Of a stretch of DNA of 64,000 nucleotides, positions 1 through 11,101 are shown piece after piece. This stretch comes from Obrimoposthia wandeli (lineage: Eukaryota): assembly GCA_977020255.1 (NCBI GenBank), contig CDROCS010000506.1, positions 1,984,001-2,048,000 on the forward strand, written 5' to 3'. Below the pieces are notes generated by a model. The model saw nothing but the letters and a program-made list of their open reading frames with translations, was not told the DNA's origin and did no database searches. The position numbers were made by a program, and so were the translations under genes. The first letter of the stretch is position 1; each line of letters begins with the position of its first letter.

Positions 1-1148
1 TAAGCCACTTAACACCATCTAACTGCCACGAGTTATTATTTGATGATGTGCTAGCAGTAGAACGAGCAGGTAAAGAGCACGATGTGTTTACCAAAACATT
101 GCGTGATCAAGGTGTAGAAGTGTTACTTCTCACTGACCTTCTTGCTGATACATTAGCAATCCCTGAAGCTAAAGAGTGGTTGTTAACAAGTCAAATATCG
201 AATTACCGCTTAGGCGCGACATTTGCTAATGACGTACGCTGTTACCTCGCTGATTTACCAAATATCGACCTTGCTAAAATCTTAACTGGTGGTCTGTCTT
301 ACGCTGAAATGCCAATGAAATCATCTTCAATGATGCAAAGCATGCACGCACCAACAGATTTCATTATTGAACCACTACCAAATCACTTATTTACTCGCGA
401 TACGTCTTGCTGGGTATATGGCGGTGTTTCTATTAACCCTATGGCTAAAGCGGCTCGCCAACGTGAAACTAATCACGTTCGTGCAATCTATCACTGGCAC
501 CCAATCTTCGCTGGCGCAGATTTCGTTAAGTACTACGGTCATGAAGAAAAAATGTATGACAACTCAACAATCGAAGGCGGTGACGTTCTGGTTATTGGTA
601 AAGGTTCAGTCCTTATTGGTATGTCTGAGCGTACAACCCCACAAGGTGTTGAGCAACTAGCATCTGGCCTATTCAAAAGCGGTCAAGCAAAACAAATTAT
701 TGCAATGCAGCTCCCTAAACACCGCTCTTGCATGCACTTAGATACAGTAATGACGCACCTGCGTGAAGATACATTCTCAGTTTACCCTGAAGTTGTAAGT
801 AAAGACGTACAGTGCTGGAGCCTAACAGGTGATGAATCAGGCGCAGTTAACGTGAAAGAAGAAGGTTACTTCGTTACCGCTATCGAAAAAGCACTCGGTG
901 TAGGACAACTAAACCTAATCACCACTGGTGGTGACAGTTTCACAGCAGAACGTGAGCAGTGGAATGATGCTAACAACGTATTAACGGTAAAACCTGGTGT
1001 CGTCATTGGTTATGAAGGTAACTCTCACACTAACGAAAAATACGATAAAGCAGGCATCACAGTTCTACCAATTCCAGGTGATGAACTAGGCCGAGGACGC
1101 GGTGGCGCTCGCTGCATGAGTTGCCCAATTGAACGTGACGGTATCTAA
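1..1148 (+). CDS. arcA: Arginine deiminase, 5'-truncated by the window edge
   Basis: Frame is open from base 3 ([15 protein letters not shown]...). ADI motifs FTRD, EGGD, MHLDT and the C-terminal catalytic GGARCMSCP are present. Confidence 0.97.
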
Positions 1149-1175
1149 CAATTTAATTCACTGAGATAAATCATT

Positions 1176-2087
1176 ATGACTAAAAAAACTGTTGTTGTGG
1201 CATTAGGTGGGAACGCTCTATTACGTCGTGGCGAGCCATTAGAAGCTGAAATTCAACGTCAAAACATCGCGACGGCTGCCAAAGCCATTGCTGAAATAGC
1301 CAAAGAATATAATGTAGTACTCGTGCATGGTAACGGCCCTCAAGTTGGTTTACTAGCACTACAAGGATTGGAATACAAAGCTGTGAGCCCTTATCCACTT
1401 GATGTTTTAGGCTCTGAAACGCAAGGAATGATTGGTTACATTTTAATGCAAGAACTTAAAAACATACTGCCTGAACAGAATGTATCTTGCTTACTAACGC
1501 AGATGAGTGTTGATCCCAATGATCCTGCATTTGCAGACCCAACAAAACCAATTGGTCCCGTTTATGCCGAAAAAGAAGCGCGTGAATTAGCCGAAAAACA
1601 CAACTGGATTATCAAACCTGACGGCGAATATTTCCGCCGTGTAGTACCGAGCCCACAACCAACTGGCATTATTGAAAATGACGCGATTGCAGCCTTAATT
1701 CAACAGCAGCATTTGGTCATCTGTACTGGCGGCGGCGGTATTCCAGTAAGAAGTGAGAATGGCAAATTAATCGGTGTAGAAGCCGTTATCGATAAGGATA
1801 TGTCAGCTGCTTATCTCGCCAAACAACTTCAAGCAGATGCGTTATTGATTTTAACAGATGCGGACGCTGTATTTATCAATTGGGGAAAACCAACCCAAAC
1901 AGCACTACGCGCAACAACCCCCTTTGAGCTAGCACAACATAGTTTCGATGCAGGCTCTATGGGACCAAAAATTGAGGCCTCTTGTGAGTTCATTAAACAA
2001 GGTGGCAAGTTTGTCGGGATCGGTGCTTTAGATGCGGGATTACGTATCTTAAAAGGCGAAGCTGGTACCAACATTACTGCAGATTAA
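1176..2087 (+). CDS. arcC: Carbamate kinase
   Basis: VVALGGNAL, HGNGPQVG, GVEAVIDKD and GSMGPK motifs; follows arcA. Confidence 0.97.
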   Translation: MTKKTVVVALGGNALLRRGEPLEAEIQRQNIATAAKAIAEIAKEYNVVLVHGNGPQVGLLALQGLEYKAVSPYPLDVLGSETQGMIGYILMQELKNILPEQNVSCLLTQMSVDPNDPAFADPTKPIGPVYAEKEARELAEKHNWIIKPDGEYFRRVVPSPQPTGIIENDAIAALIQQQHLVICTGGGGIPVRSENGKLIGVEAVIDKDMSAAYLAKQLQADALLILTDADAVFINWGKPTQTALRATTPFELAQHSFDAGSMGPKIEASCEFIKQGGKFVGIGALDAGLRILKGEAGTNITAD

Positions 2088-2113
2088 TTCGTATTAATAT
2101 ATCAAGAATATTC

Positions 2114-2141
2114 GCGGCTACGCAGCCTACGCAGTAGCCGC
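2114..2141 (+). other. GC-rich intercistronic hairpin between arcC and arcB (possible mRNA stabiliser)
   Basis: GCGGCTAC...GTAGCCGC 8-bp inverted repeat with no U-tract. Confidence 0.5.
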
Positions 2142-2168
2142 CAACCTAATTATAAAAAGGATCACATT

Positions 2169-3173
2169 ATGTCTTTCAATCTACGTAACCGTAACTTCTT
2201 AAAATTACTTGATTTCACTCCACGCGAAATCCAACACATGCTTGAATTATCTGCAGAATTGAAAAAAGCGAAATATAACGGTTATGAACAACCGCGCTTA
2301 ACAGGCAAAAACATTGCCCTTATTTTCGAAAAAAGTTCAACGCGTACACGCTGTGCTTTCGAAGTTGCCGCACACGATCAAGGCGCTCAAGTAACTTATC
2401 TCGGTCCTTCAGGTTCACAAATCGGTCATAAAGAATCAATGAAAGATACCGCTCGTGTTTTAGGCCGTATGTACGATGGCATTGAATACCGTGGTTTTGG
2501 TCAAGAAATCGTTGAAGAACTTGGCGCTCACGCTGGCGTACCGGTATGGAATGGCTTAACAACTGAATTCCATCCGACTCAAATTCTAGCTGATTTCTTA
2601 ACAATGCAAGAGCACGCTCTAGGTAAACAGTTACATGAAATTGCTTTCGCTTACCTCGGCGATGCGCAAAATAACATGGGTAATTCATTATTAGTCGGCG
2701 CAGCTAAAATGGGCATGGATATTCGTCTTGTGGCTCCAGCAGCTTTTTGGCCAAATGCAGAACTTGTCGCACAATGTCGTGAAATTGCAGCAGAAACAGG
2801 CGCTAAAATCACCTTAACTGAAGATGTTCAAGAAGGCGTGCAAGGTTGTGATTTCCTTTATACCGATGTTTGGGTATCAATGGGTGAATCAAAAGATGCT
2901 TGGGATGAACGCGTAAAAATGATGACCCCTTACCAAATCAACATGGATATGATCAAGAAAACGGGCAACCCGCATGTGAAATTTATGCATTGCTTACCAG
3001 CCTTCCACAATGATGAAACCACCGTCGGTGCAGAAGTAGCAGAGAAATATAATATGAAAGGACTAGAGGTAACTGAAGAAGTTTTCGAATCTCACCACTC
3101 TATTGTTTTTGATGAAGCTGAAAACCGTATGCATACCATCAAGGCAATTATGGTCGCAACATTAGGTCAATAA
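2169..3173 (+). CDS. arcB: Ornithine carbamoyltransferase (catabolic by context)
   Basis: SSTRTR carbamoyl-phosphate motif, HPTQ, FMHCLP; lies in the arc operon. Confidence 0.95.
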
Positions 3174-3472: not shown

Positions 3473-4402
3473 ATGAATAATACTTTGTTTAGAAGGCACA
3501 TAATTTCCATTCCAGAGCTAAGTCGAAATGACCTAGAGCTTATTGTGGATACTGCGGGGAAATTAAAAGCAGATCCTAATCCAACGCTACTGAAGAATAA
3601 AGTTATCGCGAGTTGCTTTTTTGAACCGTCAACACGAACGCGTTTATCATTTGAAACCGCCGTACAACGGTTAGGTGGTACAGTTGTTGGTTTTGACAAC
3701 GCTGGCAATACCTCATTAGCCAAGAAAGGCGAAACATTAGCTGACTCAGTACAGGTTATCGCATCCTATGTGGACGCCTTTATCATGCGCCATCCACAAG
3801 AAGGTGCTGCCCGCTTAGCATCTGAGTTTTCTAATAACGCCCCAGTGATTAATGGTGGTGACGGGTCTAACCAGCATCCAACCCAAACTTTGCTCGACTT
3901 ATTCAGTATCTATGAAACACAAGGCACCCTAGATAACCTCAATATAGCCTTTGTTGGTGATCTAAAATACGGCAGAACCGTGCACTCACTTACTCAAGCG
4001 CTGGCGAAATTTAATAACACTAAACTGTTCTTTATCTCACCCGATATTTTAGCCATGCCTGATTATATGTTACAAGAATTACGCGATGCTGGTATCGAGT
4101 ACAGCTTGCATAGCGACATTGAAGATGTGGTCGATGATCTTGATGTGCTGTATATGACTCGAGTGCAAAAAGAGCGCTTTGACGAATCAGAATATGCACA
4201 CATGAAAGCAGCCTTCATCCTTACTGCCGATATGTTAAAGAATGCCCGAGATAACCTAAAAGTGCTGCATCCTTTACCACGCATTGACGAGATCACCGTC
4301 GACGTAGACAAAACCAAACACGCTTACTACTTTCAGCAAGCTGAAAATGGTGTTTATGCTCGTGAAGCACTACTTGCTCTTGTCCTTAACGAACAGTTTT
4401 AA
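3473..4402 (+). CDS. pyrB: Aspartate carbamoyltransferase catalytic subunit
   Basis: [26 protein letters not shown] motifs. Confidence 0.98.
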
Positions 4403-4417
4403 TAGGGAGATAACCAG

Positions 4418-4882
4418 ATGATTAAAGAACACCAGTTACAAGTTGAAGCGATTAAAAATGGCTCTGTCATTGACCATATCCCGGCTAATTTAGGTATCAA
4501 AATATTAAAACTATTTAACCTAGAAGATTCCAATCAAAGGGTTACAGTTGGCCTAAACTTGCCATCATCAGAACTTGGCCATAAAGATTTAATTAAGATA
4601 GAAAATGTATTTCTCAATGAAGATCAAGCCAATCAGTTAGCTTTATACGCTCCCCATGCGACAGTAAACCAAATAGAAAACTATGAGGTTTCAAAAAAAT
4701 TAAAACTCACATTACCGCAGAAAGTGACTGCTGTTTTTGCTTGTCCAAACAGTAATTGCATTACCCATAATGAACCTGTGAATAGTAGCTTTGCAGTGGT
4801 AGCACGTAATGAGATCGTACAGCTGAAATGTAAATATTGTGAGAAATCATTCTCACGTGAAATCATGACTGAATGTAACTAG
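4418..4882 (+). CDS. pyrI: Aspartate carbamoyltransferase regulatory subunit
   Basis: [13 protein letters not shown]; zinc-binding CPNSNC and CKYC. Confidence 0.97.
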
Positions 4883-5057
4883 TACGTATCGTTGATAATC
4901 CTGTAATAATAGTGTTTACGGGGTTATCAACTACATAAAAAGTCATACACACCACATAAAACCAATTATTTAATAGACTTAGCTTGAAAAAAGCTATCTA
5001 ATTATAGGTAATTACGTATGACCTACCACGTACAGAAACGAGTCCATCGAGGTATGC

Positions 5058-5552
5058 ATGAATAATATAGAACAATCTACCGCCTATAATGACAACATAA
5101 CCGATGCATGTAAAAACCTGCTAAAAATAGAACGCCTTCATACTCAAGATGATATTCGCCAACGGTTAATTAAGCTTGGCTACAATAATATTAATCAATC
5201 GACAGTGTCTAGAATGTTGTCCCGCTTAAATGTCATAAAAGTAACTGATGCTTACGGTAAAAAGATATATCAATTACCCACCGAAGGTAAGTCGCAACAT
5301 TCCGATGTATCAGTATCAACCAAAATTGAATTTATCACTCACAACCAGTTAGTGGTCGTCATAAAAACGCCCCCTGGTTGTGCGCAACTCATTGCTCGAT
5401 TACTTGACTTGAATCCACACCCCGAAATATTAGGCGCTGTTGCAGGTAATGATATGGTGATGGTGGCACCTAAAAGCATCAATCGAATCGAAGATTGTGA
5501 GTCTGTAGTTAGATTGCTACTCGGCCAACCAAATACTGAATCAATAAACTAA
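5058..5552 (+). CDS. argR: ArgR-family arginine repressor (arc-cluster paralog)
   Basis: TQDDIR..L...G, QSTVSR recognition helix, TPPGCAQLIARLLD and AGND motifs. Confidence 0.88.
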   Translation: MNNIEQSTAYNDNITDACKNLLKIERLHTQDDIRQRLIKLGYNNINQSTVSRMLSRLNVIKVTDAYGKKIYQLPTEGKSQHSDVSVSTKIEFITHNQLVVVIKTPPGCAQLIARLLDLNPHPEILGAVAGNDMVMVAPKSINRIEDCESVVRLLLGQPNTESIN

Positions 5553-5651
5553 TTATCCTTATTTATTAGATTATTCAATCACTAGAGTAATCTAATAGAT
5601 CTTTCTAAAAATTGTATTTAGACTAATCATTTAGCTGAACGGATTTACGCT

Positions 5652-6401
5652 ATGTTTAATCTACTGACTTCTGCACTGGCTTCACAAACGCGCTTATGGG
5701 CTGGTACCAAAGCAGCCAAAACAACGATTAATGAGCAAGATCCGTTAATCATGTATGACAACGAAGCCGACCCTCTGTGTCGCTTAGTACGTGAAGCAAT
5801 TTCAGAATTGAACTTGGACGTGCTTATCATTCCTTGTCCAAAAGGCGGCGAGCGCCACAAGCAACAACTGCAAGAAATGTATAGCACAGATAAAATTCCA
5901 TTCTTGATTGATAAAAATACCCAGACAATCCTCAATTCTGCGTCTGAAATCATCACCTATTTATACAAACATTATGGCAATTGCAGCGCGCCAATCCGAT
6001 TACGTGCCAATCTATTTAACTATGCCAGCTCAACAACAGCTTCGTTAATCCGCTTTAATGCTGGTAAGACAAAAACGCCAGCAATCGAACCAACTGACCC
6101 GCTGGTTTTATATAGCTTTGAAAGTAGCCCTTATTCACGTCCAGTACGTGAAACCTTATGCGAATTAGAACTGCCGTATTTATTGGTTAATTTAGGTAAG
6201 CAGCGATTTGGTGAACTTGGCCCTGCAACAAGACGCTTAAGCCCAGGTGAATACAGCCCGTTACCTGAAACTAAGCGCAGTGCATTCTTGGCTGAACACG
6301 GCACAGTACAAGTTCCTTTCTTAAAAGATCCGAATACAGACGTCGATATGTTTGAGTCAAAAGCTATCGTAAAATATCTCATTACGACTTACGCCATTTA
6401 A
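5652..6401 (+). CDS. Protein with two tandem glutathione S-transferase N-terminal (thioredoxin-fold) domains
   Basis: Repeated units L..Y....P.(C/S)R.VRE...EL.L ... (IP/VP)FL.D.NT; no GST C-terminal domain. Confidence 0.8.
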   Translation: MFNLLTSALASQTRLWAGTKAAKTTINEQDPLIMYDNEADPLCRLVREAISELNLDVLIIPCPKGGERHKQQLQEMYSTDKIPFLIDKNTQTILNSASEIITYLYKHYGNCSAPIRLRANLFNYASSTTASLIRFNAGKTKTPAIEPTDPLVLYSFESSPYSRPVRETLCELELPYLLVNLGKQRFGELGPATRRLSPGEYSPLPETKRSAFLAEHGTVQVPFLKDPNTDVDMFESKAIVKYLITTYAI

Positions 6402-6414
6402 GTTTATCCAGACC

Positions 6415-6456
6415 AGGCGTAAGCATGTATAGCAATTGATATGCATGCTTACACCT
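6415..6456 (+). terminator. 16-bp imperfect hairpin after the 2xGST-N gene
   Basis: AGGCGTAAGCATGTAT / ATGCATGCTTACACCT with a 10-nt loop. Confidence 0.5.
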
Positions 6457-6477
6457 CCTATTAATAGCAGCTCAGAC

Positions 6478-6513
<36 letters not shown>
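6478..6513. repeat. Perfect tetranucleotide microsatellite (ATAG)9
   Basis: Read directly: 36 bp of ATAG units, intergenic. Confidence 0.97.
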
Positions 6514-6882
6514 TTCCCCGTTTTAAATCCAACACATCCTCGCCATTATCAATATTAAATACCGTTTTAGCCGCACCTGTAAGTTAGATTCAAGCCCTCC
6601 CCCCAAAAATAATATCCCGCGTAAAAAGATGATCCAGTTAGCAAATTATAACAAACAAAAAGAGACTACTTTATGTATACATACGCAGTTAACCTGCATA
6701 ATATTTAGCAATTTAAGTTATTAACCTAAGCATAACAAAATTGTAAAAAATCAAATTTAATAGAATCAATAATTTAAATAACAATGCCGTATTTACACTG
6801 TTATAAGGCCATAATAAAAACATTAGCACGCATAATAAAACAGTTTTAAATCAACCAGATACAAACAAAACAATAATCAACT

Positions 6883-6924
6883 TGTGATTAAGTTCAAAGA
6901 TTGTTCATTCCTATTACGTATACT
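6883..6924 (+). promoter_or_regulatory. CRP-like site plus -10 box (class II geometry) for the 3x Rid gene
   Basis: TGTGA-TTAAGT-TCAAA at 6883-6898 (1 mismatch to TGTGA-N6-TCACA). TATACT at 6919-6924 would centre the site near -41.5. Confidence 0.6.
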
Positions 6925-6973
6925 CGAGCCAACAACATCGAACTATAATCATATCAAATAGGATAAATATCAT

Positions 6974-8212
6974 ATGAATAACGTCATCATCAAAGCGTCA
7001 AGAAACACTGAAACTGCACCTCAAAATACAGCATCAACACAAACGGTCGCTTTTTCTCATTACAATAATATTTCAGCGCAATTACCAGTAGACCCAAGCA
7101 CTGGTGAAATTGTAGTGGGTAATATAAAAGATCAGGTAAAGCAGTGCTTAACGAATATTAAAGCGATTATAGAAAGTACTGATCATGTGATGGATGACGT
7201 AATTAAACTCACAGTCTTCCTGAAGAACATCTCAGATATGGACGCTGTAGACGAAGTCTATGCGACATTCTTCCAAAGCTACCTGCCGACACGGACGACT
7301 CTTGCTGTTGCAGCGTTGCCGATGAATGATGCTTTAGTACAAATTGAAGCGCTGATTTCCAACGGTGAAGGTACTGCGCCACAAGCTCCTTGCGCGCTGA
7401 TTAAACTAGCAAGAAATACTGCAAATGCACCGATAAGTCCGACCTCGACACAAACGGTCGCTTTTTCGCATTACAACAATATTTCATCACAATTACCTAT
7501 CGATGCAAAAACCGGTGAATTAGTCGCAGGTGGTATAACAGAGCAAGCAACGCAGTGTTTAAGCAACATAAAAGCCATTTTAGAAAGCATCAACCATGAA
7601 ATGAACGATATTGTTAAAACCACAATATTCCTTAAAAACATCGCCGATGTTGAAGCAGTCAACGCTGTTTGTGCGACGTTTTTTCCAAGCTATGTTCCTG
7701 CACGCTCAATCGTTAATGCTACCGACTTACCGATGGACGCTTTAATACAAATTGATACTTCGGTATCACACGGCGATGGCACCCCACCACAACTTCCTGA
7801 AGACACACGATTACTCGTTATAGAAGCAAGCAACACTGAAAATGCACCAACAATGTCCTGTTCACACACAGTCGCGTTTTCTCATTACAACCATGTTGCA
7901 GGTCAATTACCTTTAGATCCAAAAACCAATGTAATAGTCACGGGTGATGTGAAAGCACAGACAACACAATGTTTAATCAACATTAAAGCAATTCTAGAAA
8001 GTATTGACCACGTTATGGATGATGTCGTTAAAGTGAATATCCAAGTTAAAGATATCGCCGATATTGATGCTGTAAATGAAATTTACAACACCTTCTTTAA
8101 TAGCGACCTTCCAGCAAGAACAATCATTGGTGTTGCCGCGATCCCGATGGATGCTTTGGTACAAATTGATGTCGTTGTTTCTAACGCTGAAAGTACACCG
8201 CCACAGGCATAA
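6974..8212 (+). CDS. Single-chain protein of three tandem Rid (YjgF/YER057c/UK114) domains
   Basis: Three ~137-aa repeats (AFSHY at residues 26, 163, 301), each with (SA/SS/AG)QLP, K..(V/I)..K and P(T/A)R(T/S) motifs. Confidence 0.92.
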   Translation: MNNVIIKASRNTETAPQNTASTQTVAFSHYNNISAQLPVDPSTGEIVVGNIKDQVKQCLTNIKAIIESTDHVMDDVIKLTVFLKNISDMDAVDEVYATFFQSYLPTRTTLAVAALPMNDALVQIEALISNGEGTAPQAPCALIKLARNTANAPISPTSTQTVAFSHYNNISSQLPIDAKTGELVAGGITEQATQCLSNIKAILESINHEMNDIVKTTIFLKNIADVEAVNAVCATFFPSYVPARSIVNATDLPMDALIQIDTSVSHGDGTPPQLPEDTRLLVIEASNTENAPTMSCSHTVAFSHYNHVAGQLPLDPKTNVIVTGDVKAQTTQCLINIKAILESIDHVMDDVVKVNIQVKDIADIDAVNEIYNTFFNSDLPARTIIGVAAIPMDALVQIDVVVSNAESTPPQA

Positions 8213-8268
8213 CAGGCATTAATTTCTGCTGAGTAATTATTTAATTTCAAAGGCTTAACCTTCGATAC

Positions 8269-8303
8269 TTTTACATACGTAACCTTGGTTACGTTATGTA
8301 AAA
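8269..8303 (+). terminator. Hairpin downstream of the 3x Rid gene
   Basis: TTTTACATACGTAACC / GGTTACGTTATGTAAAA near-perfect inverted repeat. Confidence 0.5.
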
Positions 8304-8333
8304 TCAATAAGTAAGCTGCTGAAAATAAAGCAC

Positions 8334-8371
8334 AAAAAAGCCCGCTAAACATCGTCATGTTTAGCGGGCTT
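8334..8371 (-). terminator. Intrinsic terminator of ilvC
   Basis: 15-bp perfect stem AAGCCCGCTAAACAT/ATGTTTAGCGGGCTT with a U-tract on the minus strand. Confidence 0.85.
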
Positions 8372-8403
8372 GATTAACTACACCTTGATGGTTACATCAG
8401 GTA

Positions 8404-9879
8404 TTAGCCAACGATTTTTTTCATGTCTGACATGTAGCCACGAAGTTTCTTACCGATAACTTCTACAGGGTGATTACGAATTTCTTCGTTCACGTCGATT
8501 AGACGTGCATTATCAACACTGTTAGATTCAGCAGTGAATGCAGAACCCATCAATTCAGTTGGTAGCGCATTTACGTAGTCACGTAGTTGTGGACCCGCTT
8601 CATGAGCAAATAAGTAACAACCGTATTCAGCTGTATCAGAGATAACAACGTTCATTTCATATAAACGCTTACGTGCAATCGTGTTCGCGATTAACGGCGT
8701 TTCATGTAGTGACTCGTAGTATGCAGACTCATCAACGATACCTGAAGCAACCATGCTTTCGAATGCTAGTTCAACACCCGTTTTAATCATAGCTACGAAT
8801 AACGTACCGTTGTCGAAGAATTCTTGTTCGTCAATAACGATGTCTGATTCTGGGTAGTTCTCGAATGCAGTTTCGCCAGTCTCTTTACGCCATTTAAGCA
8901 GGTTAACGTCATCGTTTGACCAGTCAGCCATCATCGTTGATGAGAAGTGACCAGTGATAATGTCATCCATGTGCTTTTCGAATAATGGGCGAAGCGTCGT
9001 TTTCATTTCTTCAGCCATTTCGAAGGCTTTAATTTTAGCAGGGTTAGATAGACGATCCATCATGTTAGTGATGCCGCCATACTTAAGTGCTTCAGTGATT
9101 GTTTCCCAACCGAACTGAATCAATTTACCTGCGTATGCTGGTGACTTACCGTCAGCAACCATTTTATCAAATGCTAGGATTGCGCCTGTTTGTAACATAC
9201 CGCAAAGGATAGTTTGCTCACCCATAAGGTCAGATTTAACTTCAGCAACAAACGAAGACTCAAGAACACCAGCGCGATCGCCACCTGTAGCCGATGCGTA
9301 TGCTTTAGCAATCGCAAGACCGTCACCTTTTGGATCATTTTCAGGGTGAACAGCGATAAGTGTTGGAACACCGAAACCACGTTTGTATTCTTCACGTACT
9401 TCAGAACCAGGACACTTAGGTGCAACCATAACTACTGTAATATCTTTACGAACTTGCATGCCTTCTTCAACGATGTTGAAACCGTGAGAATAAGCTAGCG
9501 TTGAATCTTGTTTCATCAACGGCATGATCGTTTCAACAACATTTGAATGCTGTTTATCAGGAGTAAGGTTTAATACTAGATCCGCTTGTGGGATTAAGTT
9601 TTCGTATGTATCTACAACGAAACCATTTTCTGATGCATTAAGGAAAGATTGACGTTTTTCAGCAATTGCCGCGCCACGTAATGCATAAGAAATATTAAGA
9701 CCAGAGTCACGCATGTTTAGGCCTTGGTTAAGACCTTGCGCGCCACAACCGACTACTACTATGTTCCAATCTTTAATGAAGTTACAACCGTCAGTAAATT
9801 CACTGCGATCCATAAAACGACATTTGCCAAGTTGTTCTAACTGTTGGCGTAAGTTTAAAGTGTTAAAATAGTTAGCCAT
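8404..9879 (-). CDS. ilvC: Ketol-acid reductoisomerase (long, class II)
   Basis: [14 protein letters not shown] start, [18 protein letters not shown]; GGAGAG SD before the second Met. Confidence 0.98.
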
Positions 9880-9946
9880 GCTGCTCTCCATGAGAATTTA
9901 ATAATTTAAATGTGCCATCACTACTCCAGTGATGCGCTATGTATTC

Positions 9947-10013
9947 ACTATATGCTAAGTTACTCATTGCTGGAAATGATATATTTACAATACAGTGTTG
10001 CATTTTATGCAAC
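9947..10013 (-). promoter_or_regulatory. ilvC promoter with tandem IlvY operators
   Basis: Palindrome GTTGCA-TTTTA-TGCAAC (9997-10013, LysR T-N11-A), second site ATATATCATTTCCAGCAAT (9966-9984, minus) and TATAGT -10 (9947-9952, minus). Resembles the E. coli O1/O2 layout as I recall it. Confidence 0.75.
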
Positions 10014-10222
10014 GTAACCATTTATCCAATGCGAAATAGGTTAATATCAGCTTTTAAAATAGTGAAACAGAGACTGGGCATACAAATATTTCACAGATCA
10101 AAGTATAAACAGTTTTTTACCCTATTTTAGCGCTAGTCGTTTTTTTGAAAAAAAATATTAGCCGCAATAATAAAGCTAATAATAACAATATATAAACATT
10201 ATACGGTCAGGAAAAAGCCAAT

Positions 10223-11101
10223 ATGGACATTCGCTCACTACAACTTTTTTTACATCTAGCCACGACATTGCACTTTGGTAAAACCGCAGAGGCGATGCAT
10301 GTCAGCACATCGACACTGACGCGCACGATGCAACGATTAGAAGAATCCGTTGGCAGCCAAATTTTTACCCGTGATAATAGATCCGTCGCGTTAACAGAAA
10401 GCGGCAAACGCCTGCGCAGCTTTGCCCAGCAAACCCTCGAAAATTGGACACAACTGAAAGCCGACCTTAGCAGTCACAGCGGCGAACTCGATGGTGAGCT
10501 TAAAATCTTCTGTTCTGTCACCGCTGCATACAGCCATTTGCCGCCTATATTAGACAAATTCCGCTTATTGCACCCAAATGTAGAGCTAAAGCTGATCACC
10601 GGTGATGCCGCCATGGGCATGCAACTCGTTGATGAAGAAAGCATTGATATTGCCATTGCTGCGCATCCAGACCAAATATCTAACCGTTTAAAGTTTGTCG
10701 AGATAGCCAAAGTACCGCTATCTATCATTACCCCTGTGATTTCTTGCCAAGTTCAACAGCAGATCATGCAAGACAATATTGACTGGAATGAAGTGCCATT
10801 TATCCTGCCTGAACACGGCCCCGCGCGTAAGCGTATTGATAAATGGTTTAAGCAGATGAAGATTAAACCGAGTATTTATGCCACGGTGGCTGGTCACGAG
10901 GCCATTGTCAGTATGGTAGCGCTAGGATTAGGCGTCGGTATTGCCCCTGCCGTGGTGGTTGATAACAGCCCCGTTCGCGATCGGGTATTAACCTTTGAGA
11001 ACAGCAATAAAATTGAGCCTTTTGATCTGGGCTTATGCTGTCAGCGTAAACGCTTTGACGAACCAGTGATCACTGAGTTTTTTAGCATGATTAAGCATTA
11101 A
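10223..11101 (+). CDS. ilvY: LysR-type activator of ilvC
   Basis: MDIRSLQLFLHLA..LHFGKTA HTH, FCSVTAAYSHLP, VAGHEAIVSMVALG; divergent from ilvC. Confidence 0.96.
   Translation: MDIRSLQLFLHLATTLHFGKTAEAMHVSTSTLTRTMQRLEESVGSQIFTRDNRSVALTESGKRLRSFAQQTLENWTQLKADLSSHSGELDGELKIFCSVTAAYSHLPPILDKFRLLHPNVELKLITGDAAMGMQLVDEESIDIAIAAHPDQISNRLKFVEIAKVPLSIITPVISCQVQQQIMQDNIDWNEVPFILPEHGPARKRIDKWFKQMKIKPSIYATVAGHEAIVSMVALGLGVGIAPAVVVDNSPVRDRVLTFENSNKIEPFDLGLCCQRKRFDEPVITEFFSMIKH

What the first reader, a model, noticed from the sequence alone, without database searches (positions are those of the whole stretch)
6974..8212. Single-chain pseudo-trimeric Rid protein with a remodelled active site in all three domains
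Seen: three ~137-aa Rid repeats joined by G(E/D)GT(A/P)PQ linkers, with DNA-level similarity (ACAAACGGTCGCTTTTTC recurs). The catalytic Arg is kept in all three (R107, R244, R382). Against E. coli RidA (recalled), the GPY Tyr17 motif is lost, Glu120 is Gln in every domain (VQIEA, IQIDT, VQIDV), and SGQ is SAQ, SSQ, AGQ. Known: Rid proteins are homotrimers with active sites at subunit interfaces that hydrolyse reactive imines/enamines such as 2-aminoacrylate, protecting PLP enzymes like IlvE. Inference: fusion fixes the trimer and lets three non-equivalent sites diverge in specificity. The gene is next to ilvC and near ilvA/ilvE.
Basis: partly seen in the sequence, partly recalled or inferred. 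Interest (0 to 1): 0.75.

Follow-up and report, generated by a model that had tools for sequence, protein, structure and literature searches.

The report
Three-in-one Rid (3x-RidA) protein
This Moritella gene encodes three fused Rid domains that probably fold into one trimer-like enzyme; the design was named "3x-RidA" in 2015 and is common in marine bacteria, but nobody has tested it, and it tends to sit beside genes that make carbamoyl phosphate or carbamate.

Summary
Window 6974-8212 (+) encodes a 412-aa protein made of three Rid (PF01042) domains that are 54-57% identical to each other. The catalytic Arg is kept in all three, and Gln replaces RidA's Glu120 in all three.

The architecture is not new. 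Niehaus et al. 2015 named it "3x-RidA" and presumed a covalently linked trimer. More than 5,000 protein clusters with this architecture exist, and the closest named one is 92% identical (Moritella sp. F3). I found no biochemical or structural study of any member.

- The Glu-to-Gln change, an F-S-H-Y-N motif and a Q-C motif are invariant across the fused family and shared by all three domains. The remodelling therefore marks the family rather than divergence between sites.
- One ancient triplication accounts for the domains. About 15 domain-specific conserved positions exist, and 12 of 81 members lost Arg in exactly one domain.
- AlphaFold gives pTM 0.84, consistent with one compact unit.
- Adjacency to ilvC is specific to Moritella. 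The recurrent neighbours are carbamate kinase with arginine or agmatine deiminase genes (11 of 81 loci) and urease operons (10 of 81).
- All five genomes tested also keep a canonical RidA.

Verdict: a new member of a known but uncharacterised kind, of moderate interest.

The parts
6974..8212 (+). 3x-RidA coding sequence (412 aa plus stop)
   Evidence: ORF list. PF01042 x3 and TIGR00004 x3. 92% identical to 'RidA family protein' of Moritella sp. F3.
6974..7384 (+). Rid domain 1 (residues 1-137). Arg107 is at 7292-7294, Gln123 (Glu120 position) at 7340-7342, and SAQ at residues 34-36.
   Evidence: TIGR00004 scores 101.8 bits for this domain alone.
7385..7798 (+). Rid domain 2 (residues 138-275). 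Arg244 is at 7703-7705, Gln259 at 7748-7750, and SSQ at residues 171-173.
   Evidence: TIGR00004 scores 101.0 bits alone. The D2 clade has 99% support across phyla.
7799..8209 (+). Rid domain 3 (residues 276-412). Arg382 is at 8117-8119, Gln397 at 8162-8164, and AGQ at residues 309-311. It carries the D3-specific Phe-to-Gln change in beta4.
   Evidence: TIGR00004 scores 104.9 bits alone. The D3 clade has 99% support.
7364..7396 (+). Linker 1 (about residues 131-141, GEGTAPQ...)
   Evidence: Motif position. pLDDT is below 50 for residues 131-137.
7772..7804 (+). Linker 2 (about residues 267-277, GDGTPPQ...). The G-D-G-T-P-P-Q stretch is invariant in a 44-protein alignment.
6402..6973 (+). A 572-nt AT-rich upstream intergenic region with an AGGA ribosome-binding site at 6960-6963. 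No Rfam family and no ARG box were found.
   Evidence: Large upstream gaps are typical of the family.
8338..8371 (.). A 15-bp-stem hairpin between the convergent 3x-RidA and ilvC genes. The scan calls it terminator-like on the minus strand (the ilvC side).
48..3173 (+). Arginine deiminase pathway genes: arcA (48-1148, cut by the window start), arcC carbamate kinase (1176-2087) and ornithine carbamoyltransferase (2169-3173).
   Evidence: NCBIfam. ORFs.
3473..6401 (+). pyrB (3473-4402), pyrI (4418-4882), an ArgR-family regulator (5058-5552) and a protein with two GST_N domains (5652-6401), directly upstream of the 3x-RidA gene.
8404..11101 (.). ilvC (8404-9891, minus strand) and ilvY (10223-11101, plus strand). 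These are neighbours, but the adjacency is not conserved.
   Evidence: In Moritella PE36 other genes lie in between. ilvC occurs only in the Moritella loci.

Best explanation
The gene encodes a member of the 3x-RidA family. Three Rid domains descend from one ancient triplication and fold within a single chain into the trimer-like barrel that ordinary Rid proteins build from three subunits. This gives three clefts between domains, and each cleft keeps the carboxylate-binding, catalytically essential Arg.

The most likely activity is hydrolysis of reactive 2-imino or enamine acids, that is, damage pre-emption as in RidA. It would work as an accessory enzyme alongside the cell's canonical RidA.

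Its recurrent placement suggests where it acts. It sits next to carbamate kinase with arginine or agmatine deiminase genes, as here (arcA-arcC-OTC-pyrBI-argR), and next to urease operons. This points to the still undefined Rid function linked to carbamoyl phosphate or carbamate metabolism, rather than to branched-chain amino acid synthesis.

Shown here: the architecture, the residue pattern, the single triplication, co-occurrence with canonical RidA in the five genomes tested, and the gene neighbourhoods. Inferred: the fold as one unit (a prediction only), the catalytic activity and the physiological role.
For: - Three Rid domains are present, and each superposes on solved RidA monomers at TM 0.85-0.91.
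- The whole-chain AlphaFold2 pTM is 0.84.
- Arg is present in all three domains in 69 of 81 family members. It is never lost in more than one domain.
- All three domains are equally conserved, with 72-76% mean pairwise identity.
- All fused domains form one clade (100% support). D2 and D3 are each monophyletic across phyla (99%).
- Five of five genomes with a 3x gene also carry a canonical RidA scoring 165-172 bits. This chromosome does too.
- Carbamate kinase lies within 8 kb in 11 of 81 loci: Moritella, Photobacterium, Endozoicomonas and one unnamed Vibrionaceae genome. Three of these are complete agmatine deiminase clusters.
- Urease genes lie within 8 kb in 10 of 81 loci, directly upstream in most: Shewanella, Oceanisphaera, Photobacterium and Flavobacteriaceae.
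- Niehaus 2015 (PMC4433059) named 3x-RidA and showed that Arg105 is essential. It also reported RidA genes clustering with OTC, ATCase, argR, arginine deiminase and carbamate kinase genes, and carbamoyl phosphate toxicity in ridA mutants.
Against: - No activity, structure or expression data exist for any 3x-RidA.
- Glu120 is replaced by Gln, and the Tyr17 lid loop is shortened and remodelled. In TdcF both residues contact the ligand or delimit the cleft.
- Each domain alone scores just under the RidA-subfamily cut-off: 101-105 against 106.25 bits.
- About three quarters of loci show no carbamoyl-related or urea-related neighbour. Several are next to transposases.
- Niehaus 2015 found no hydrolysis of carbamoyl phosphate or isocyanate by S. 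enterica RidA.
- The model's lid and linker regions have pLDDT below 50, and I could not inspect coordinates.
Confidence: 0.6

Rival explanations
1. The fused family is a functionally separate Rid subfamily. Its rebuilt pocket (Gln for Glu120, S-H-Y-N for G-N, invariant Cys in helix 1, shortened lid) would act on a substrate other than 2-iminoacids. Candidates are products or by-products of carbamoyl phosphate, carbamate, cyanate or ureido-compound metabolism.
For: - Ten positions are at least 90% conserved, identical in all three domains, and different from the canonical RidA consensus.
- A long branch separates the fused clade from canonical RidA.
- Per-domain TIGR00004 scores are below the cut-off.
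- The gene co-occurs with canonical RidA in the five genomes tested rather than replacing it.
- It is enriched next to carbamate kinase with ADI or AgDI genes, next to urease, and occasionally next to adenosine deaminase, xanthine permease or XdhC.
Against: - Arg105, the residue tied to imine hydrolysis, is kept.
- Gln can still hydrogen-bond a ligand or water, and Glu120Ala barely affected RidA (Niehaus 2015).
- No carbamoyl-directed activity has been shown for any Rid protein.
- Most loci lack such neighbours.
Confidence: 0.2
2. Fusion freed the three sites to evolve different specificities, and the protein protects PLP enzymes of the neighbouring ilv pathway (IlvA products, IlvE) from several different imines.
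For: - Fifteen positions are conserved within each domain but differ between domains. Examples are Tyr kept in the D3 lid in 65 of 81 members, Phe to Gln in D3, and Asn/His/Asn near the C-terminus.
- Twelve of 81 members lost Arg in exactly one domain, an asymmetry a homotrimer cannot have.
- ilvC is adjacent, and ilvA and ilvE are 7 and 15 kb away.
Against: - The principal pocket residues (Arg, Gln, Ser-x-Gln, Asn/Asp) are the same in all three domains.
- The ilv neighbourhood is confined to Moritella and is interrupted in strain PE36. ilvA is near the gene in only two other loci.
- A canonical RidA is present elsewhere on the same chromosome.
Confidence: 0.12
3. The protein is not an enzyme. 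It binds small carboxylate metabolites and acts as a sensor, buffer or regulator, as was once proposed for TdcF and YjgF proteins.
For: - TdcF binds 2-ketobutyrate, serine and propionate through Arg105.
- Loss of Glu120 and of the Tyr lid could reduce catalysis while keeping binding.
Against: - The Rid family is now established as imine/enamine deaminases wherever Arg is present (Niehaus 2015).
- There is no DNA-binding or signalling domain.
- Sequence conservation is very high across phyla (67-92%), which is typical of an enzyme under strong constraint.
Confidence: 0.08

Closest known systems
3x-RidA (Niehaus et al. 2015, BMC Genomics 16:382; example EF_0115 of Enterococcus faecalis)
   Same: Three RidA-type domains are fused in tandem in one polypeptide of about 410 aa, presumed to be a covalently linked trimer. 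Partial sequences from Firmicutes (Streptococcus uberis, Bacillales) carry the same SHYN and QC motifs and Gln in place of Glu120.
   Different: Nothing defining differs, so this is a member. I could not retrieve EF_0115 itself for a direct comparison. The paper gives no residue analysis, structure or assay for 3x-RidA.
RidA / YjgF (S. enterica, E. coli; PDB 1qu9) and the canonical RidA on the same chromosome (C506:2428282-2428635)
   Same: The Rid fold is shared (TM 0.85-0.91 per domain). The essential Arg is kept, as are the Ser-x-Gln loop and the Asn88-equivalent. The gene also sits next to a pyrBI operon and arc genes, as ridA does in Salmonella.
   Different: - Identity is only 32-42%.
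- It is one chain instead of three.
- Gln replaces Glu120, the Gly-Pro-Tyr lid is lost, and invariant S-H-Y-N and Q-C motifs appear.
- Each domain scores 101-105 bits against 183 bits for the canonical RidA on TIGR00004.
- It is present in addition to RidA.
TdcF (E. coli; PDB 2uyj/2uyk/2uyn/2uyp)
   Same: It is a trimeric barrel with inter-subunit clefts in which Arg105 binds the ligand carboxylate.
   Different: In TdcF the Glu120 side chain hydrogen-bonds the ligand, and the beta1-beta2 loop with Tyr17 closes the cleft. Here the first is Gln and the loop is one residue shorter without Gly-Pro. The NF008490 equivalog is not met (157 against 222 bits).
RutC (pyrimidine utilisation protein C; PDB 3v4d)
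   Same: It is a Rid-family protein tied to a nitrogen-catabolic pathway that releases carbamate.
   Different: TIGR03610 is not met (160 bits for the whole protein against 169.1; 50-73 bits per domain). No rut genes are nearby.

Membership tests
Rid / YjgF-YER057c-UK114 superfamily (Pfam PF01042) | Match to the Ribonuc_L-PSP profile above the gathering score | tested here: met
   253.7 bits against 27.3, in three stretches.
Rid / YjgF-YER057c-UK114 superfamily (Pfam PF01042) | Chorismate-mutase-like beta-alpha-beta-alpha-beta-beta fold | tested here: met
   The AlphaFold2 secondary structure repeats three times. Foldseek matches RidA chains at TM 0.85-0.91 and rmsd 1.5-2.8 A.
3x-RidA (Niehaus 2015) | Three RidA-type domains fused in tandem in one polypeptide | tested here: met
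   The definition is quoted from PMC4433059.
3x-RidA (Niehaus 2015) | Folds as a covalently linked trimer unit | tested here: inconclusive
   pTM is 0.84 with mean pLDDT 74.8, but the linkers and lid loops are below 50 and coordinates could not be inspected. No solved chain covers more than one domain.
RidA subfamily (NCBIfam TIGR00004) | Score above the curated cut-off (106.25 bits) | tested here: inconclusive
   The whole protein scores 284.6 bits. Each domain alone scores 101.8, 101.0 and 104.9 bits, just under the cut-off. The canonical RidA of the same chromosome scores 182.9.
RidA subfamily | Conserved catalytic Arg (Arg105 of E. coli/S. enterica RidA) | tested here: met
   R107, R244 and R382 align with it. 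All three are kept in 69 of 81 family members.
RidA subfamily | Conserved Glu120 | tested here: not met
   Gln is present in all three domains (Q123, Q259, Q397), and in all three domains of 79 of 81 family members. The canonical sequences have Glu in 10 of 10.
RidA subfamily | Conserved Tyr17 (or Phe) in the beta1-beta2 lid loop | tested here: not met
   The window protein has Ser, Ser and Cys at the aligned position. In the family, D3 keeps Tyr in 65 of 81 members. The loop alignment is uncertain.
RidA subfamily | 2-iminoacid / enamine deaminase activity | not testable with these tools
   This needs an enzyme assay.
RutC (TIGR03610) | Score above the equivalog cut-off (169.1 bits) | tested here: not met
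   160.4 bits summed over three domains, and 50-73 bits per domain.
TdcF-type enamine/imine deaminase (NF008490) | Score above the equivalog cut-off (222 bits) | tested here: not met
   157.2 bits, and 52-71 bits per domain.

The most novel reading that the evidence does not exclude
The fused-Rid family could be a distinct Rid enzyme class. It is marked by Gln for Glu120, S-H-Y-N, Q-C and a shortened lid in every domain. Its real substrate would arise where carbamoyl phosphate or carbamate is made or used (arginine and agmatine deiminase pathways, ATCase, urease). [quoted passage not shown] In this reading the single-chain design also allows conserved asymmetry between the three sites, including one site becoming non-catalytic.
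Probability: 0.2. Interest if true: 0.6.

Novelty: new member of a known kind. Interest (0 to 1): 0.33.

Why it matters
Rid proteins are a universal system for pre-empting metabolite damage. Their link to carbamoyl phosphate metabolism was shown genetically in 2015 but was left biochemically undefined in that paper.

The fused 3x-RidA branch is widespread: it occurs in at least 539 places in a collection of about 186,000 species genomes and in a third of sampled Vibrionaceae. It is extremely conserved across phyla, yet I found no study of it. A single-chain trimer is also an experimental opportunity, because each of the three clefts can be mutated independently. That is impossible in a homotrimer.

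The family signature and the carbamate kinase and urease neighbourhoods found here give concrete, cheap experiments. For this particular window, however, the gene is an ordinary, already annotated member of that family.

Tried and rejected
1. A BLAST search for E. coli ridA DNA, to anchor residue numbers, found no match. Numbering therefore rests on the canonical RidA of the same chromosome, aligned to solved RidA chains, and on residue names in PMC4433059 and PMC1884159.
2. I looked for a riboswitch or leader in the 572-nt upstream gap. Rfam found nothing there. The weak Trp/His-leader hits at 8267-8416 fall on the terminator hairpin and are below threshold.
3. I tested ArgR control with an ARG-box pattern. 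There were three matches in the window against 8.6 expected by chance, and none upstream of the gene.
4. The sigma-70 scan found no plus-strand promoter upstream.
5. I looked for a single-domain ancestor with the family signature. Nearly all short hits are fragments of 3x proteins. The few genuine 137-138-aa ORFs look like chimeras with a D1 head and a D3 tail, so I read them as secondary collapses.
6. I first labelled neighbour cluster c3 as pyrB. BLAST against the window's genes showed it is carbamate kinase, and that cluster c5 merges OTC and ATCase. I corrected this.
I did not try for expression evidence by another route.
8. I considered a metal site formed by the invariant His, Cys and His. 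I could not test it without model coordinates.
9. I did not use the large representative-protein search, because the word search and family scans already answered the question.

Full report
**1. The observation**

Window 6974..8212 (+) is an intact 412-aa ORF. Pfam finds three Ribonuc_L-PSP (PF01042) stretches (253.7 bits). NCBIfam finds three TIGR00004 "Rid family detoxifying hydrolase" stretches (284.6 bits).

Cutting the protein at residues 137 and 275 gives three units. They are 54-57% identical in protein and 66-68% in DNA.

I aligned the domains with ten canonical RidA sequences from the same assembly, including the one on this chromosome. That one is anchored to solved RidA chains. R107, R244 and R382 fall on the catalytic Arg. 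Q123, Q259 and Q397 fall on the Glu120 position. SAQ, SSQ and AGQ fall on SGQ. Ser, Ser and Cys fall on Tyr17, in a lid loop that is one residue shorter and lacks Gly-Pro.

**2. Where it comes from**

The "genome" is a 1.35-Gb assembly of 6,912 contigs that holds many bacteria. The window lies on a 3.78-Mb bacterial contig. Three other contigs of the assembly encode their own 3x-Rid proteins, 73-76% identical.

**3. It is a known architecture**

Niehaus et al. [quoted passage not shown] No other paper in the library uses the term, and I found no characterisation. No solved PDB chain contains more than one Rid domain.

The family is abundant:
- More than 5,000 protein clusters of about 410 aa match at E <= 1e-10.
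- At least 539 places in a collection of about 186,000 species genomes encode a relative.
- 49 of 151 sampled Vibrionaceae carry it, eight of them twice.
- None of 250 evenly sampled other Gammaproteobacteria carry it.

Members from Gammaproteobacteria, Bacteroidota, Spirochaetota, Verrucomicrobiota, Desulfobulbaceae, Acidobacteriota and Actinomycetota are 67-78% identical to the window protein. Transposases flank two copies. I read it as a patchy, probably horizontally mobile accessory gene under strong constraint.

**4. What the residue pattern means**

Across 81 proteins (80 genome loci plus the window):
- Arg is present in all three domains in 69. The other 12 lost it in exactly one domain: D1 four times, D2 twice, D3 six times.
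- Gln occupies the Glu120 position in all three domains in 79.
- Thirty-six alignment columns are at least 90% conserved and identical in all three domains. Ten of these differ from the canonical consensus. Examples are Gly-Asn to Ser-His within an invariant F-S-H-Y-N motif, Val to Cys in helix 1 (Q-C), and Glu to Gln.

The same signature is seen in partial sequences from Streptococcus, Bacillales and Salmonella, and in four-domain variants. The "remodelled active site" is thus a family hallmark shared by the three domains, not divergence between them.

Its functional weight is uncertain. In TdcF, Glu120 hydrogen-bonds the ligand and the Tyr17 loop closes the cleft. Yet Niehaus 2015 reports that Ala substitutions at these positions had little effect on S. 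enterica RidA, whereas Arg-to-Ala abolished activity.

There is also conserved asymmetry. Fifteen columns are conserved within each domain but differ between domains. For instance, D3 usually keeps Tyr in the lid and has His for Gln next to it, D3 has Gln for an otherwise invariant Phe, and the C-terminal position reads Asn/His/Asn.

**5. Origin**

In a quick maximum-likelihood tree, all fused domains form one clade (100% support), separated from canonical RidA by a long branch. D2 and D3 are each monophyletic across phyla (99%), and D1 is basal and unresolved. One ancient triplication explains this.

A search with domain 1 alone found almost only fragments of 3x proteins. The few genuine stand-alone 137-138-aa ORFs combine D1-type N-terminal features with D3-type C-terminal features. 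They look like secondary collapses rather than ancestors.

**6. Fold**

AlphaFold2 with a 44-sequence alignment gives mean pLDDT 74.8 and pTM 0.84. The Rid secondary-structure pattern repeats three times. The linkers and the first 25 or so residues of each domain are below pLDDT 50.

A pTM this high for a three-domain chain indicates a confidently packed single unit. I could not inspect coordinates, so three-fold pseudo-symmetry is inferred and not shown. Foldseek matches every domain to RidA monomers (TM 0.85-0.91), and no solved chain covers more than a third of the model.

**7. Context**

Upstream, on the same strand, lie arcA, arcC (carbamate kinase), ornithine carbamoyltransferase, pyrB, pyrI, an ArgR-family regulator and a protein with two GST_N domains. 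A 572-nt gap follows, and then the gene. Downstream, convergent, are ilvC and then ilvY. ilvA and ilvE are 7 and 15 kb further on.

This upstream set is the one Niehaus 2015 lists around Salmonella ridA: OTC, arginine deiminase, argR, ATCase and carbamate kinase.

The chromosome has a second pyrBI operon (PyrB 79% identical) next to its canonical ridA.

Across 81 loci no neighbour is universal, and ilvC occurs only in the Moritella loci. Two contexts recur:
- Carbamate kinase lies within 8 kb in 11 loci: Moritella, six Photobacterium loci, Endozoicomonas and one unnamed Vibrionaceae genome. Three of these are complete agmatine deiminase clusters with aguA, putrescine carbamoyltransferase, carbamate kinase and antiporters.
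- Urease genes lie within 8 kb in 10 loci, directly upstream in most: Shewanella, Oceanisphaera, Photobacterium and Flavobacteriaceae.

Adenosine deaminase, a xanthine/uracil permease and XdhC appear in a few more loci.

By my rough estimate, a random gene would lie within 8 kb of either module in well under 1% of genomes. The enrichment therefore looks real, even allowing for related genomes. This estimate is an inference, not a formal test.

All five genomes tested that carry a 3x gene also keep a canonical RidA.

**8. Reading**

- Most likely (about 0.6): a single-chain pseudo-trimeric Rid hydrolase with three Arg-bearing clefts. It would act as an accessory imine/enamine deaminase whose physiological niche is tied to catabolic modules that make carbamoyl phosphate or carbamate.
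- Rival (about 0.2): a distinct substrate class linked to carbamoyl or ureido chemistry.
- Rival (about 0.08): a non-catalytic ligand binder.

**9. Limits**

- I had no model coordinates.
- I could not retrieve EF_0115 itself.
- E. coli residue numbers come from the cited papers, not from an E. coli sequence fetched here.
- The tree is the quick version, because the careful search did not finish.
- The neighbourhood survey uses my own simple ORF calls and only the 80 loci closest to the query.

**10. Verdict**

The object is a new member of a known, named but uncharacterised kind. The added value is at family level: the invariant signature, the single triplication, the tolerated loss of one site, and the carbamate kinase and urease neighbourhoods. 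Interest is moderate to low for this window, and somewhat higher for the family as an experimental target.

Noticed in passing
window 6478-6513: An (AGAT) tetranucleotide repeat of about nine units lies in the intergenic region about 460 nt upstream of the 3x-RidA start codon. I did not check whether its length varies between Moritella strains.
   Followed up: no
window 3473-4882; G000:C506:2426526-2427923 (L098 4027-4488, L005 210-1142): The chromosome carries two pyrBI operons (PyrB 79% identical). One lies upstream of the 3x-RidA gene. The other is divergent from the canonical ridA.
   Followed up: partly
L061, L063, L064, L073 (Shewanella); L074, L080 (Oceanisphaera); L087, L089 (Photobacterium); L079, L058 (Flavobacteriaceae): In most of these loci the 3x-RidA gene sits at the end of, or next to, a urease operon (after ureG or UreJ, or after ureC). 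In Shewanella an adenosine deaminase gene follows it.
   Followed up: partly
L023 5722-12135 (Endozoicomonas elysicola); L018; L086 (Photobacterium): The 3x-RidA gene is embedded in agmatine deiminase pathway clusters with aguA, putrescine carbamoyltransferase, carbamate kinase and antiporters. The Endozoicomonas locus has two carbamoyltransferase genes and two permease genes around it.
   Followed up: partly
L095/L096 3001-3417; L097 1089-1502: Metagenomic contigs carry stand-alone 137-138-aa Rid ORFs with the fused-family signature. These look like chimeras with a D1 head and a D3 tail, which suggests a three-domain gene collapsing to one domain by recombination between repeats.
   Followed up: partly
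P0015 (565 aa), P0017 (Laribacter hongkongensis, 579 aa), P0014 (634 aa): Four-domain versions of the same family exist, with four SHY and four QC motifs. How a four-domain chain would close a three-fold barrel is unclear.
   Followed up: no
P0175, P0224 (Salmonella enterica, 215 and 186 aa; P0175 seen on 71 contigs): Salmonella carries truncated 3x-RidA-type ORFs that end inside domain 2. In P0175 the D1 Arg is replaced by Leu. They may be pseudogene remnants.
   Followed up: no
window 5652-6401: A 249-aa protein with two GST_N (thioredoxin-like) domains lies between argR and the 3x-RidA gene. It is conserved in that position in the three Moritella loci only, and a second copy follows the 3x gene in L012.
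   Followed up: no
L032 9334-10254; L050 5167-5685: IS1595-type and DDE transposase genes lie directly beside the 3x-RidA gene in a Spirochaetia and a Vicinamibacteria genome. This fits horizontal spread of a gene that is 72-75% identical across phyla.
   Followed up: no
G000 contigs C4085:227485-228612, C5137:12319-13470, C4901:21362-22498: Three further bacterial contigs in the same host-associated assembly each encode a 3x-RidA that is 73-76% identical to the window's.
   Followed up: partly
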